NCBI GenBank assembly: GCA_904063045.1
Contig: CAJFCJ010000018.1
Location: forward strand, 930,001 to 994,000
Source of the DNA: Dimorphilus gyrociliatus
Lineage: Eukaryota > Animalia > Annelida
DNA: 64,000 nucleotides
Reading direction: 5' to 3'
The first letter of the stretch is position 1; each line of letters begins with the position of its first letter. The position numbers and the translations under genes are program-made. Of this stretch, positions 42,582-48,849 are shown piece after piece. The notes below the pieces were generated by a model. The model had not been told where the DNA came from. It saw only the letters and a list, made by a program, of their open reading frames with translations, and searched no databases.

Positions 42582-42899
42582 AAGAATTTTTTTAAAACAC
42601 CTATTTAACTTATTGTTTTTGTTACTTTACTTGTAAAGATAGTAATGATAATAGTAATAATAAAAGAGATCACAAAGTCTTTCAAGTATTAACAAAGTTA
42701 TATTAATATAATAATAAATATATCTGTTTTATGTACAATGTATGTATGTAAATATCTATCAATATATATATATATATATTTTTGTATGTATAAGCAACTG
42801 ATATAACAATTAAATAAGATACTATTCTTCATGAAACAAAAATGCAAAGAATTTCATTATATATGGACTGAGCATTCCATTTATAGCTGATTTTTCTTC

Positions 42900-45520
42900 T
42901 ATATTAGCAATTTCCTTTTAATTTAACATCAAACCTATTTTTAGATGGAGATTAAGAATTAATATCCTGACATAATCTTAAGGGAATTAATTGATTTCAC
43001 TTACTCAAGGATTTCTTTCGGAACAAAGATATAATCCGTTGAAATATTTTCTTTTAAGTTCTTTAAATTCCTAATATATTTCACCTTGTTTCGGAAATTC
43101 GAACTGTATCCATAAATATTGTATTATTATCTATTATTTAAGGAAATAAGAGCAAAAAGTATACCTACCTATAAAATGGTTTTGCCATAATAAACAAAGT
43201 TTTCAGCCACATCGTTGGATGAACAATTAGTAATCGTTTTAAATTCTTTTTTAGCTTCTTATCAATCATATCACAACATTTTTTTAGCCAGATAAGAGAA
43301 GGCAATTTATTTTTTGGTGATGCTCCATGAAAGAAAACGATTACATAATCGTCCATAACCAAAAGTTCTAGTGTAGATATCACGTACAAGAATAAGTTAT
43401 CCATAATATAGTCATAATCCTTAAGCTTTTTATCTGGTAGATAACAAGTACAAAATACAATAATCGCTTTAAAACCTTCTTCATAATATCCTGTATTAAA
43501 ATTATTGATTATTGAGCTATATTTAAAATTATTAGCAATGTTGATCATTACCCCCATGAGAGATTACTTTCTTATAAGGTTCAATGACTCTGACATCGAT
43601 CTCGTACTCTTGTTCTGCTATGCAAACAATTTGCCAATTGTTGTTCGTAAATTTTTCATCTAGCTCATCAATCGTAGATGTTGTTTCAATGGTATTATCG
43701 TCATCGAAATCGAAGGAAAATTCAAAATCTGGTAAGATCTTTCTCTTAGGTAGATCACTATTCGTTTGGGAGTTGATATCTTTAAGGGAAATCATAGTTA
43801 GATATTATGTATGACAATATTGATATCTAAATAAGAATTTTTTTCACCACTTACTTGGGGAGTTAGACGCAAGATCTCCATTTTCATTCGTCTTGTTCTA
43901 CAAAGGAATTTTTTAATACTGTCAATAGGCAATGTTTTCTCTACATGATAGACGTATTTATGGTTATACAGGCTTATTTAGGACAAATAATATGTCTTGT
44001 TTCATTAAAAAAGAAAATAGAAATAATATTAAAAGAAGAGAAAATGACCAGAGAAGAAGGTAAATAATTAACCTGATTAACAGATATAACATTTTTATAT
44101 AACGTATCAAAATTCTCATCATCTTCCAATTCATCTGAGCTATTTATATCAAAATCTGATAGATTTAAACTTTCAGTTCTAGACAATTTCTCATTCTTAT
44201 GTTTTTCAGCGGCTATACTATCTATGCCACTATCAGCTGAGCAAGTTTCCTTTATAATATCCATAGCTAATCTCTAAACTTTTAATATCGTATAAACGCT
44301 ATAAATAAAAATTGTATTTATAGTATCTTCAATCTCATCTCAAAAGAGCTAAGAGGTAAATGAAGGTAGATTGAAACACAGAAACGTGACAAATCTTCCT
44401 TCAATTCGTGATAATACTGGTAGTGAGTAAGAATTTATACAATGTGAAATATTTCATTTCAGCAACTCGAAGCAGGGGAGAACGTAAGGGGGGCCAAAAT
44501 GTGTTAAATTTATAATAAAAGGGGGGAGGTGAGCCAGGCTTATGACAGGTAGCGGGTGGGGGCGAGACAAGGTTTTTGGTGGGAAACTAGGTATAAGATT
44601 TAGCTGAATTTGTTGTTTAAGTTGTAACGCAAATAAGGCCTATAAACAGATTTTACATAGACGGAAATCCGGAAGTTTTTTTCACATATTTTATTTAAAA
44701 AAATAATAATTCAAGAAAAGAATATACTAATTGTAATATCTTATCTTAATCTCGTGTCAAAATTCGACAAGATAGATAGATAGATAGAGAGTGAGAGATA
44801 GAGAGAGAGAGAATAAGATGATGAAAATATAATATATGATTACTTGACAGCTTCTTAAGTAAATAAATATAAAATATATATAAGATATATATTTGTGCAT
44901 ATAATATGTTAAAGGAATTAGGGTTGTTTTGTATAGCTTACCAAATTCTTTTTAAATTGAATTGGTCCGTCTAAAGCTTTTGTGAAACTAGTACTCTCAA
45001 CATCCATGTCATTTAAGCTTGAAGTAACAATATCCATATTACCACCTAGAATGTCGAAGTTAGGTAAATATTGTATTTCAACTGGGCATTCTGTTTCATC
45101 ATAGAATATTTCGTTCAGTAATTCATCTGTCAAAGGTGGTTCATAACTGATGAGAGCCTCGTTAATTATCTGTTTAGCCAAACAATAATCTACAGCCTCA
45201 TGAGGAATTTTGTAATCAAAAGAAGTTGAGTGAGATCTGATAACGTTTGCTAGTGTAAAATTCTGAATATCGTGTAAATGGGAATCACTTTTCCTCCCAC
45301 GAAGATTTGACGCTTCGACTATATTAGAATTTTCTAAAATAGTCATATTTTCTCTCATAAATGACTTTATCTTAGGAACATTTTCAAAACTATCTTTTCT
45401 CCTTCCTTGAAAATTTGACAAACAATTGGCAGTTTGATTACTTCCGTTGCCTTGATAATTGTCAAAAGTATTAGCTTCCCTTAAACTTATGTTATCCGAA
45501 CTCTTAATTTCCGTATCCAT
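42900..45520 (-). CDS. BNIP2/caytaxin-family protein: acidic low-complexity N-terminus plus BCH (CRAL-TRIO) domain; last exon uncertain
   Basis: IDVRVIEPYKKVISHGG, AIIVFCTCYLP, YIMDNLFLYVISTLELLV, KKLKKNLKRLLIVHPTMW, SSNFRNKVKYI. Exon 45520-44939 joins in phase 0 to RLAMDIIKET. Confidence 0.88.
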
Positions 45521-45667
45521 TAAAATTAATCAAATAAATATATATATTTTTTTTCCTTTCTGTAATTTATAACAATAAATAATATATCTGAAGAGAGGAA
45601 TAAAAAAAACATTGATTAAAAATGTATAAACAATAACTGAAAATAGACCTACTTACCTGTGAAAAAC

Positions 45668-48600
45668 TTAATCTTGAAAAAAAGACAAGCTTTTAAGGAA
45701 AAGTGGTAGAATAACCTTTCTAGACGCCTTCACATTACGCTGTATGAAAGCAGAGGTAAAACGTTGTGACGCTGCAGGCAAGTCAAGTCTATCTAAGTCC
45801 AAAGACGGTTCTCGACAATTCGTTAATATTTTCACTGCCTGGAAGTGAAAAAATGAATAACTTTTAACATATGAAAACTACAAAACATTCTCTTCGTTTC
45901 TCTAAATATCAACGAGCAAAAATCAATATTTGTGTAACGTTATACTTTTATTTCTAGATAGTGAACTTTTAAAAGGAAACAATAAAAAGAAATAATAAGA
46001 GATACTAGAGACAAGGGGGAGGAAACGTGTAGCCCAGCAGGTATTGCATTAACGGTTGTCACGAAACCTTGAAGCCGGACATGTGTTGTATTGTCATTAA
46101 AATAATCTAATTCTCTGAAGTTTCTGCATTCAATGACAAACAGAGTAAAAATAATTCGTCGAGAGACAATACAAATAGAATCATCAAAGCACATTGTTAA
46201 AAAGGTAGGAGAAGATAAAATAAAATAAATGAACAAGAGCCAGAGAGGGAGTAAAAGAATTGGAGATGTGGCGAAGGGGAGAGAGAGGAGAGAGAGAGAG
46301 AAAATATGCACTATTTATTAAACTAACTTCAAAAGCAAATTCCCCTTTTACACAACACTATATCACGACTACTCCCCCTCTCTCTTTCATGTTTTTATCA
46401 TTTTCTCTGACGTTTTTGTCATTTATTTTATTTGAGCACAATAGGCCTAGCTAAAACTAGACTACATAAATTCATTACGGTTCATCTTTAAATAAATAAT
46501 TTATATCACATTTCCTTCCTGATTTATGAATTAGCAAGGAGGAGGAGAGAGCGTAAAGAATATTATGGTTAAATACCCTATACTTATCAAAGTTTAATCT
46601 TTGTTCTTCCTATTTACTTTAAAGGACGCATCTATTTTTATATAAATATATAATAAATGTATATTATATTGTAAATTGCCGTAGAAATGGCTTACAAAAT
46701 ACAAAAAATTTATTTGGCTTTATTAGTCAATGTAGCGAATAAAATTCTCTTTTAGGTCGATTGAGTAATTTGAACTAAATACAGAGACAGAGAGAGAGAG
46801 AGAAAGAAACAAAAAAACAAGTGAATAATTAACAAAATAGAGTAGAAAGTTAAGGTTTTTTCTAAAAGTTCTTGTATAAACGATAAATACTACGCTGTAG
46901 GCATTTTCCACTTGTTATCACAAGAATAATTATAGAATATGAAGAAATACGACTATTAAAAAAATCAATACATATATATAATATAGTTGTATATAACAAA
47001 TCGAATCTTTCTTTAGACCAGTCGTTTGAAAATAGTAGTCAGTTTATCAAACTAACAAATAAATAGAACAGAATTTCTTTACAATTAAAGCGTAATAATT
47101 GACTATTTTCATAGAAAAAAAGGAGATAGGGGTTGCAAAATAATAGTACAGTCTACTGTAATTGACTAATTTAGTCATGTTATTCCTAATATATAAGTTG
47201 TTCTATATAATAGAGAATATTTTAGAGATTATAATAGATATTATTAAATACTTTTTTATATGAATTGCGTTAAAGTCAAATAGTATTGAATATAATGAAC
47301 GTCACTTACAAATTATGAATTTATGTCCATAAATCAGATTGGAGAAAATGTAAAGAACTTTTCATGTTAATTGCACGAAGTTTACTAAACACTACAGTTC
47401 TTCGAATCTTAATAATACCCTCGTGAATAAACTCGAACAATAGGTGGCGCTATATTTCTATTACGAACCTCCTCTTTTATCTTGTTATTTTCTGAATAAA
47501 CTGCAATTTCACGTTTTGTGGTATTATCCTCAGTAACGAACAATACCATAATAACGACAAGGTTTAACGAAAATAGCTTAGAAAATTCTCTCAATTCTCC
47601 AAAGACGTTGTCCTTATTAAAGAATGTCTAAAAACAGAGACAGAACATAAATTAAGCATAACATAATTATTCTATTTATTAATTAGTACAACAATTGTTA
47701 TTAAAACATCTATATAATGGGAATAAATTAACTTACAAGTAGCGGAAGCGGTATTGAACTAATTCCAATTTTAATATTTGCATCGTTGATAATCTTCACA
47801 TCTTTCCTTAAGATTTCCACAAGTGTAAGACCTTGAAGAGAGAGAGAGAGAGAGAGAATATAACAAAGATTTATTATAATTAATTAATTAATTAATTTTT
47901 ACTTGAAACATCAGTTTTCGCTTTAAAGTACTCATTAAAAATTTCAGTATGGTCTATGTTTGGTAGATATTTTCTTTCCAATTGATTTAATATGATTTTA
48001 TCTTTTTCTGTTACTATATCAGCTTCTTTGGATAGATTTATAGTATCCAGAATGATTGTAGCTACGTAAACATTCAAGATGTAAAAATCGATTAATTTCA
48101 TTTTTAAATAATTAATTTACTGTATAGCATTTCGGCCAAATGTTTGTCAATTGTAATACTTGAGTTTAAAATTAGCTCAGCTATCAAAGTACTACAAGAG
48201 CCAACTTTTTCTATTTTAGTTTTAACTCTGTAAATGAAAGTATAATTACTATAAATTAAAGACAAAAGTGTAATTAACCTTTCATCATCAACCCATTGCT
48301 TTCGATGATGATCAACAATGTAGGTAATGCACGGTTTGAGAGGTATTTCGTCTTCGGATAATGTATTTCTATCAACAAGGACAACCTCAAGCTTTCCTTT
48401 TTCTTTATAATCAATTAAATTAATATCATCTTTGAAATGGAGGAAAGATGAACTTATTCCGTATTTATCAAAGAGGTGTTTAACTTCCGTTTTCAAAGGA
48501 TAGTCCTCTTTATTGATATTCAATACTGGTATTGTTTTTGCATTATCTGTCTCACTTGTCTGAATTAAAAGTATCTCTTATGAAAAGATGATTATTTCTA

Positions 48601-48849
48601 AAAAAAAAAACACTTGAAACTAAAAGAAACCTTATGCAAATAGTATCCAAAAGAGACAGCGGAAGCAGCTGAATCTAAGTCACAGGCACTGTTTCCTATA
48701 ACTGCTCTCAAGATATTGTTTCCTCTTATGTTCGCCTGTAAACAAGAAAAATTTGCAATATTTTATAAGCTTTGTGTTTACTTTTAGCATTCGTATTTAC
48801 TGACAATAGCTGTTTTACACCATTCTAAATATTTTGCTATTTCTCCCAT
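45668..48849 (-). CDS. PRUNE: Prune exopolyphosphatase (DHH + DHHA2)
   Basis: VIGNSACDLDSAASA, IVDHH, VGSCSTLIAE, KREIAVYS. The last exon AVKILTNC...QRNVKASRKVILPLFLKSLSFFQD* matches the PRUNE1 end QGNTQVSRKKLLPLL. Confidence 0.92.

What the first reader, a model, noticed from the sequence alone, without database searches (positions are those of the whole stretch)
45520..45840. Prune and a BCH gene linked by an intron 11 nt after the Prune stop: candidate dicistronic or shared-exon unit
Seen (minus strand): Prune ends at TAA 45670-45668. Eleven nt later is a perfect CAG|GTAAGT donor, then a 69-nt intron (45656-45588) ending in a strong pyrimidine tract + CAG. About 68 ATG-free nt follow before the ATG of the BCH protein (45520). 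I saw no AATAAA between the two ORFs. An in-frame TGA 12 nt upstream of that ATG blocks a simple fusion protein. The only ATG in the last Prune exon is a start-stop ATGTGA. Known: vertebrate PRUNE2/BMCC1 is a Prune-DHH + BCH fusion, and human PRUNE1 lies next to BNIPL. Inference: an ancient Prune-BCH transcription unit, seen here in an unfused state that may be ancestral to PRUNE2.
Basis: partly seen in the sequence, partly recalled or inferred. Interest (0 to 1): 0.75.

Follow-up and report, generated by a model that had tools for sequence, protein, structure and literature searches.

The report
Conserved intron linking Prune and BCH
In a miniature marine worm, the Prune enzyme gene is followed 11 bases after its stop by a perfect splice signal aimed at the start of the neighbouring BCH gene; a related species keeps this link, so the two genes probably overlap as transcription units, but I could obtain no RNA data to prove it.

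Summary
On the minus strand Prune ends at TAA 45670-45668. A CAG|GTAAGT donor follows 11 nt later and is the only copy of that 9-mer in the 64-kb window. A 69-nt intron ends in a pyrimidine tract plus CAG at 45588. A 67-nt ATG-free leader then precedes the BCH ATG at 45520.

A related species (Logan genomic contigs) keeps the stop, the 11-nt gap and the donor. It also keeps a strong acceptor 59 nt before the ATG, although its intron is 206 nt and neutral DNA is only about 45% identical.

The 63 nt just before the Prune stop region form the longest exact match in 13 kb of synteny, with 21 codons lacking any synonymous change. Prune's 1630-nt last intron carries three conserved non-coding islands. 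No AATAAA or ATTAAA lies between the last exon and BCH intron 1.

I read this as a real UTR intron joining two overlapping tandem transcription units, not a fusion protein. I could obtain no RNA evidence, so dicistronic versus shared-exon remains open. The PRUNE2-ancestor idea is plausible but untested. The genome is most likely Dimorphilus gyrociliatus. This scan noted the same stretch once before (s1-084108), with no follow-up.

The parts
45668..48849 (-). Prune-like DHH/DHHA2 phosphoesterase gene, coding part. It has eight or nine predicted exons (an in-frame intron inside the large DHH exon is likely). The start is ATG 48849 and the stop is TAA 45670-45668.
   Evidence: Stop-to-stop frames and GT-AG search. 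Pfam DHH and DHHA2 exon hits, both below the curated cut-offs. Weak match to yeast exopolyphosphatase. Exons were read separately and never joined.
45839..47468 (-). Last Prune intron, 1630 nt, phase 0. Other predicted introns in the two genes are mostly 56-137 nt (BCH introns 1 and 2 are also longer). It carries three conserved non-coding islands at 46945-46880, 46450-46310 and 46140-46040.
   Evidence: Splice prediction. Sliding identity against L002 is 75-90% in the islands and about 45% around them. No Rfam family and no fold signal.
45657..45838 (-). Last Prune exon, 182 nt. It encodes the final 56 residues (end of DHHA2, ASRK motif), the stop, and 11 nt of 3' UTR up to the donor.
   Evidence: 81% amino-acid identity to L002 by tblastn over the 69-residue stop-to-stop frame.
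45680..45742 (-). 63-nt block identical in both species. It lies inside the Prune coding sequence and includes the start-stop ATGTGA at 45735-45730.
   Evidence: It is the longest exact match in 13 kb of synteny; the next longest is 38 nt. It holds 21 consecutive codons with no synonymous change. P is about 5e-4 for this exon and 8e-3 over 520 codons.
45651..45659 (-). 5' splice site CAG|GTAAGT. The GT begins at 45656, 11 nt after the Prune stop.
   Evidence: Only copy of the 9-mer in the window. Identical in L002, L006, L007 and L008.
45588..45656 (-). 69-nt intron between the two genes. It ends in a pyrimidine tract plus CAG.
   Evidence: The counterpart in L002 is 206 nt (2148-2353), also ending in a pyrimidine tract plus CAG.
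45521..45587 (-). 67-nt ATG-free exon segment before the BCH start. It holds TATAAA at 45571-45566, an A-run, and the in-frame TGA at 45532-45530.
   Evidence: The idea that TATAAA serves as a variant poly(A) signal for Prune and/or a TATA box for BCH is my inference only.
44942..45520 (-). BCH gene exon 1, 193 codons of poorly conserved N-terminus. The donor is TTG|GTAAGC at 44941.
   Evidence: 69% identity to P0001 of the related species. The donor is kept in L002.
42822..44273 (-). Remaining BCH exons. BNIP2 motif exon about 43745-43552; CRAL_TRIO_2/BCH exon about 43490-43169; two short 3' exons.
   Evidence: Pfam hits, PDB 6r3v, splice prediction. Boundaries are approximate.

Best explanation
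The GT-AG pair is a real, selectively kept short intron in the untranslated spacer. It makes Prune and BCH overlapping tandem transcription units (a conjoined pair).

Inferred mechanism: polymerase transcribing Prune meets no canonical poly(A) signal before the donor or inside the 69-nt intron. Prune pre-mRNA therefore runs on and is spliced 11 nt after its stop onto an exon that begins 67 nt before the BCH start codon. At 11 nt from the stop, this junction would not mark the mRNA for nonsense-mediated decay. Prune mRNA then ends either in that short leader (variant signal TATAAA plus A-run) or further inside BCH.

BCH protein most likely comes from its own capped mRNA. The control DNA for that mRNA is embedded in the 3' end of Prune: the oversized last intron with three conserved islands, and a 63-nt invariant block in the last exon. 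Whether that mRNA starts upstream of the donor (a truly shared exon) or after the acceptor is not settled.

No fusion protein is made through this junction.
For: Shown:
- The donor is the only full-consensus 9-mer in the window.
- Donor, the 11-nt offset from the stop, and a strong acceptor are kept in a species whose neutral DNA is about 45% identical and whose intron is 206 nt rather than 69 nt.
- Of three GTAAG sites in the aligned 2.1 kb, the two predicted donors are kept and the intronic one is not.
- No AATAAA or ATTAAA occurs from 45952 to 44695.
- The 63-nt exact match just before the stop is the longest in 13 kb of synteny, and 21 codons there have no synonymous change.
- The 1630-nt last intron has three conserved islands.
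- The second BCH paralogue on contig C2 also has a predicted 5' UTR intron just before its ATG, in both species.
- Stops separate the ORFs, and the frame relation is not conserved.

From the literature: large introns in this species tend to hold open-chromatin regulatory sites (PMC7854359).
Against: - No transcript evidence of any kind: three word searches, the exhaustive representative search and three exact look-ups found no RNA-derived protein for either gene.
- Only one related species is available. Its five contigs are identical copies.
- Variant poly(A) signals are common in AT-rich DNA, so lacking AATAAA is weak evidence. BCH itself has no canonical signal near its own stop.
- The related species has an AATAAA inside its intron (L002 2319). 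That could let Prune mRNA end unspliced there.
- The genome paper found no sign of operons.
- The extra conservation of the 63-nt block could serve something unrelated to BCH.
Confidence: 0.55

Rival explanations
1. Functional dicistronic mRNA. A single promoter upstream of Prune drives one spliced mRNA carrying both ORFs. BCH is translated by reinitiation or internal entry across the 78-nt AUG-free spacer.
For: - The spliced spacer has no ATG in either species (78 nt and 70 nt), while the introns hold 1 and 5 ATGs.
- There is no canonical poly(A) signal between the ORFs.
- The junction is conserved.
- Other notes in this scan list similarly tight same-strand pairs in this genome. I did not check them.
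Against: - Reinitiation after an upstream ORF of about 376 codons is normally very inefficient (general knowledge).
- ATG depletion is not significant (about 2.4 expected, P about 0.1; computed).
- The genome paper reports canonical promoters and no operons.
- The conserved islands in the last Prune intron look like separate control DNA for BCH.
Confidence: 0.15
2. Two ordinary close neighbours. The donor and acceptor are cryptic or rarely used. Prune mRNA ends at a variant poly(A) site in the 148-nt spacer, and BCH starts just upstream of its ATG.
For: - TATAAA at 45571-45566 with an A-run and T-rich sequence after it could be a poly(A) site or a TATA box.
- The relative has an AATAAA in its intron.
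- The paper reports short intergenic regions and narrow promoters.
Against: - An unused perfect 9-mer donor would not be expected to survive unchanged where the adjoining sequence is about 45% identical.
- A transcript that contains both a consensus donor and a strong acceptor 69 nt apart should be spliced (inference; the species' median intron is 66 nt).
- The putative poly(A) motifs are not conserved between the two species.
Confidence: 0.12
3. A PRUNE2-like fusion protein made by alternative splicing. For example, the penultimate Prune exon (donor 47468, phase 0) joins BCH exon 2 (phase 0), skipping the Prune last exon and BCH exon 1.
For: The three introns involved are all predicted to be phase 0, so this skip would stay in frame.
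Against: - It would remove the last 56 residues of DHHA2, including the conserved ASRK motif.
- No sequence feature supports it, and the exon 2 acceptor is ambiguous in the relative.
- The junction in question cannot give a fusion: TAA plus TGA in this species, and a frame shift in the relative.
Confidence: 0.04

Closest known systems
Vertebrate PRUNE2 / BMCC1 (Prune DHH-DHHA2 N-terminus fused to a BNIP2/BCH C-terminus)
   Same: The same two domain families appear in the same order on one strand. [quoted passage not shown] It also yields BCH-only isoforms (PMC3765211).
   Different: Here the two ORFs are separate. Prune has its own stop, a further stop lies before the BCH ATG, and the frame relation is not kept in the related species. 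There is no giant linking exon.
Human PRUNE1 and BNIPL neighbours at 1q21.3
   Same: Prune and a BCH gene are separate genes lying side by side. Adjacency and shared orientation rest on my own knowledge. Both genes are listed in a single association interval in dog (PMC6834583).
   Different: I know of no described splice linking the human pair. I could not examine the human locus with these tools.
Conjoined genes / read-through transcripts spliced between tandem neighbours
   Same: A donor in the upstream gene's terminal exon is joined to an acceptor in the downstream gene's leader, on the same strand and a short distance apart.
   Different: Such transcripts are usually minor and poorly conserved. 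Here the donor is the best in the window, lies 11 nt after the stop, and is kept across species. Use in RNA is not shown.
Drosophila Adh-Adhr type dicistronic mRNA (my own knowledge)
   Same: The downstream gene of a tandem pair is expressed on a transcript that also carries the upstream ORF, without spliced leaders.
   Different: No evidence here that BCH lacks its own promoter. Conserved islands in the Prune last intron suggest that it has one.
Nematode or tunicate operons resolved by spliced-leader trans-splicing
   Same: Same-strand genes about 150 nt apart, with a strong acceptor shortly before the downstream ATG.
   Different: The acceptor has a matching cis donor 69 nt upstream. The species is reported to lack spliced leaders and operons (PMC7854359).

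Membership tests
Prune (DHH/DHHA2 phosphoesterase) family | DHH domain with the DxD and DHH motifs | tested here: met
   The exon frames contain GNSACDLDS and IVDHH. Pfam DHH E 7e-5 on one exon, which is below the gathering score because it is a fragment. Yeast PPX1 2qb6 E 0.004.
Prune (DHH/DHHA2 phosphoesterase) family | DHHA2 domain after the DHH domain | tested here: inconclusive
   Pfam DHHA2 E 0.0016, 24.5 bits against a cut-off of 27, on the single exon 47841-47737. An ASRK motif is present in the last exon. The spliced protein was not assembled, so the whole-domain score is untested.
BNIP2/BCH (group I BCH) family | BNIP2 motif followed by a CRAL_TRIO_2/BCH domain | tested here: met
   PF12496 at 5.9e-15 and PF13716 at 2e-18 on consecutive exons. 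ARHGAP1 BCH domain 6r3v at 1.7e-16.
PRUNE2-type fusion gene | One open reading frame running from DHH/DHHA2 into BNIP2/BCH | tested here: not met
   In this species TAA 45670-45668 and TGA 45532-45530 lie between the ORFs in the spliced frame. In the relative the spacer is 70 nt, so the frames differ.
Conjoined / overlapping tandem transcription unit | Splice donor in the upstream gene's last exon and acceptor in the downstream gene's leader | tested here: met
   Sequence. Both sites are conserved in L002.
Conjoined / overlapping tandem transcription unit | Transcripts observed that cross the junction | not testable with these tools
   No RNA-derived protein or contig was found for either gene.
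Spliced-leader operon | Spliced-leader RNA added at the downstream gene's acceptor | not tested
   Not tested here. The genome paper reports no over-represented 5' leader sequences and no operons (PMC7854359). A cis donor is present 69 nt upstream of the acceptor.
Ancient Prune-BCH microsynteny | Same tandem order in distant animal phyla | not testable with these tools
   I could show it only in two dinophilid-like genomes. Human adjacency rests on my own knowledge. No other animal genome is reachable here.

The most novel reading that the evidence does not exclude
Prune and BCH form an obligate, evolutionarily old bicistronic unit held together by an intergenic intron. Both proteins would come from one spliced mRNA in annelids. 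Vertebrate PRUNE2 would then have arisen simply by losing the stops on either side of that intron, and PRUNE1-BNIPL would keep the unfused state.
Probability: 0.1. Interest if true: 0.75.

Novelty: new member of a known kind. Interest (0 to 1): 0.45.

Why it matters
If RNA data confirm the junction, this would be a conserved splice linking two neighbouring genes in a genome published as free of operons.

It would also give a concrete intermediate for how a two-domain gene such as PRUNE2 can arise from neighbours, or break into them. The intron and splice sites are already in place, and only stop codons separate the frames.

It would further show gene-control DNA of one gene (BCH) sitting inside the coding end of another (Prune). 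That is one way compact genomes lock gene order.

Tried and rejected
1. RNA evidence.
- Word searches with BCH exon 1, its first 70 residues and the Prune last exon.
- The exhaustive representative search with BCH exon 1.
- Exact look-ups of three window ORFs.
- Result: only genomic contigs of one related species. L009 (948 nt) proved to be plain genomic sequence.

2. Possible duplication relic. I asked whether the small 5' UTR exon of the C2 paralogue is a relic of the Prune last exon. The alignment shows no homology, and a shared 10-mer is within chance. Rejected.

3. Structured RNA in the conserved islands or the 63-nt block.
- No Rfam match.
- No fold z-score in both species.
- A pairing between UUUACCU and the donor exists only in this species.

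4. First exon in an island. I looked for an island that splices into the Prune last exon. No conserved donor lies at the island edges.

5. Other searches.
- Metagenome scan for the invariant block: nothing.
- ESM Atlas with the BCH exon: only generic CRAL-TRIO and PRUNE2-fragment clusters, nothing on invertebrate fusions.
- Literature on Prune-BCH synteny or the origin of PRUNE2: nothing relevant.
- The paper's held supplements do not mention either gene.

6. Spliced models. This kept full-length relatives out of reach of the length-limited word search.

No contig looked human.
Full report
WHAT IS THERE

On the minus strand the window carries a Prune-like DHH/DHHA2 gene (coding part 48849-45668). 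A BNIP2/BCH gene follows directly (ATG 45520, last coding exon near 42825).

- The Prune side is named from the DxD and DHH motifs in the exon frames.
- It also has a DHH Pfam hit, a DHHA2 exon hit and a weak match to yeast exopolyphosphatase. The Pfam hits are below the curated cut-offs because single exons were scored.
- The BCH side has clear BNIP2 and CRAL_TRIO_2 hits and matches the BCH domain of ARHGAP1.

I searched exons one at a time by reference. That step is left out. It is the reason full-length relatives could not be reached with the length-limited word search.

THE OBSERVATION

- TAA lies at 45670-45668.
- 11 nt follow, then CAG|GTAAGT with GT at 45656.
- The intron is 69 nt and ends ttcctctcttcag at 45588.
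- 67 ATG-free nt precede ATG 45520.
- TGA lies in frame 12 nt before that ATG.
- The last Prune exon (45838-45657) has one ATG, the start-stop ATGTGA.
- No AATAAA or ATTAAA occurs on this strand from 45952 to 44695, which is inside BCH intron 1.
- The 9-mer CAGGTAAGT occurs exactly once in the 64-kb window on both strands, at this site; 0.23 copies are expected by chance.
- The intron length is close to the species median of 66 nt (PMC7854359).

WHICH GENOME

- Earlier notes of this scan name the genome Dimorphilus gyrociliatus.
- I could check this only indirectly. The assembly has 349 contigs and 77.9 Mb. The paper reports about 350 scaffolds and a 73.8-Mb genome, with very short introns.
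- That paper states that spliced leaders and operons are absent.

THE RELATED SPECIES

- BCH exon 1 found one relative at 69% identity (P0001). It sits on a 13.8-kb Logan genomic contig (L002). Four further contigs from other runs are identical over the region.
- Gene order is the same: Prune last exon, BCH, then PIG-S, an LRR gene and IFT20.
- Neutral DNA between the two species is about 45% identical, which amounts to unaligned.
- 34-49% of codons with an unchanged amino acid differ synonymously.

Against that background the relative keeps four things:
- the Prune stop;
- an 11-nt gap;
- ACAG|GTAAGTA exactly;
- a pyrimidine tract plus CAG 59 nt before the BCH ATG.

Its intron is 206 nt instead of 69 nt. 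Of the three GTAAG sites in the aligned 2.1 kb, the two predicted donors are kept and the one inside an intron is not. I take this as good evidence that both splice sites are used.

EXTRA CONSTRAINT AT THE END OF PRUNE

- The 63 nt at 45742-45680, inside the Prune coding sequence, are identical in the two species.
- This is the longest exact match in the 13-kb comparison; the next is 38 nt.
- It covers 21 consecutive codons with no synonymous change. The first half of the same exon changes at the normal rate.
- The chance of such a run is about 5e-4 for this exon and 8e-3 over all 520 codons compared.
- So this stretch carries a second function at the nucleotide level.
- Neither Rfam nor folding in both species supports an RNA structure.

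THE LAST PRUNE INTRON

- The intron is 1630 nt. Most other predicted introns in the two genes are 56-137 nt; the exceptions are BCH introns 1 and 2.
- It holds three non-coding islands at 75-90% identity.
- The genome paper reports that long introns in this species tend to hold open chromatin.
- My inference is that BCH control DNA lies inside the 3' part of Prune.

THE PARALOGUE

- The genome has one Prune gene and two BCH genes.
- The second BCH gene, on contig C2, has no Prune next to it.
- In both species it has a predicted small non-coding exon, bounded by an acceptor and a GTAAGT donor, and an intron ending just before its ATG.
- A 5' UTR intron therefore looks like a trait of this gene family. 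That favours the view that the 69-nt intron also serves BCH mRNA.
- I found no homology between that small exon and the Prune last exon.

NO FUSION THROUGH THIS JUNCTION

- In this species the spliced spacer is 78 nt. The two ORFs share a frame, but TAA and TGA lie between them.
- In the relative the spacer is 70 nt, so the frames differ.
- A skip from the penultimate Prune exon to BCH exon 2 would stay in frame, because all the introns involved are phase 0.
- That skip would delete the end of DHHA2, and nothing supports it.

HOW IT MOST LIKELY WORKS

Shown: the sites, their conservation, the lack of a canonical poly(A) signal, the extra constraint, and the conserved islands.

Inferred:
- Prune pre-mRNA must contain the donor and, with no signal before the acceptor, the acceptor too. 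It is therefore spliced there.
- At 11 nt from the stop, this junction should be invisible to nonsense-mediated decay.
- The Prune unit thus ends on or beyond the BCH leader.
- TATAAA at 45571-45566, followed by an A-run, could be a variant poly(A) signal, a TATA box for BCH, or both. It is not kept in the relative, so I give it little weight.
- BCH probably has its own start site. I cannot say whether it lies upstream of the donor or after the acceptor.

Confidence:
- Overlapping tandem units: 0.55
- Truly dicistronic mRNA: 0.15
- Unused sites between ordinary neighbours: 0.12
- Fusion isoform: 0.04

COMPARISON WITH WHAT IS KNOWN

- The layout is that of a conjoined gene pair. The donor is unusually strong and conserved.
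- It mirrors vertebrate PRUNE2, which was first annotated as two genes and still makes BCH-only isoforms (PMC3765211).
- It also mirrors the human PRUNE1-BNIPL neighbours. That adjacency is my own knowledge; the two genes are co-listed in one interval in PMC6834583.
[quoted passage not shown] It says nothing about gene order (PMC3313917).
- I found no paper on Prune-BCH synteny.
- The same tandem order in an annelid and in humans would be very unlikely by chance.

VERDICT

The decisive data (RNA-seq junction reads, CAGE, 3' ends) exist publicly for this species but were out of reach here.

This scan noted the same stretch once before (s1-084108, no follow-up). It also holds notes on other tight same-strand pairs in this genome (s1-081679, s1-082900, s1-083761). 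I did not check those.

Noticed in passing
window 46310-46450 (minus strand): A 140-nt non-coding island in the last Prune intron is kept at 80-87% identity in the related species. It ends in a conserved AATAAA at 46319. No Rfam match and no fold signal. It could be an enhancer, an alternative Prune 3' end or an unknown RNA.
   Followed up: partly
window 46040-46140 and 46880-46945 (minus strand): Two further conserved non-coding islands (up to 90% identity) lie in the same 1630-nt intron. The first is about 200 nt upstream of the last Prune exon. Both are candidate BCH control elements.
   Followed up: partly
window 44404-44444 and about 44264 (minus strand): BCH intron 1 is about 690 nt and holds a 41-nt block at 85% identity. 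BCH exon 2 opens with an ATG kept in both species. This may indicate an internal promoter and a short BCH isoform lacking exon 1, as in human PRUNE2/BNIPXL.
   Followed up: no
G000:C2:2324037-2330030 (L013, L011): A second BCH paralogue has a homologous long first exon (82% identity to P0002 of the related species). No Prune gene lies nearby; a RhoGAP gene and a CAP-Gly/ankyrin gene lie upstream. It has a predicted multi-exon 5' UTR conserved in L003.
   Followed up: partly
L002 2326-2412: In the related species an ATG inside the intergenic intron is in frame with the BCH ATG, so an unspliced transcript would add 29 residues. The gene caller used either start (228 or 257 residues). The extension is not conserved in this window.
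   Followed up: yes
window 45754-45760 and 45651-45657 (minus strand): UUUACCU in the last exon can pair with the donor AGGUAAG (fold z -2.8). The related species lacks the complementary stretch, so this is probably chance.
   Followed up: yes
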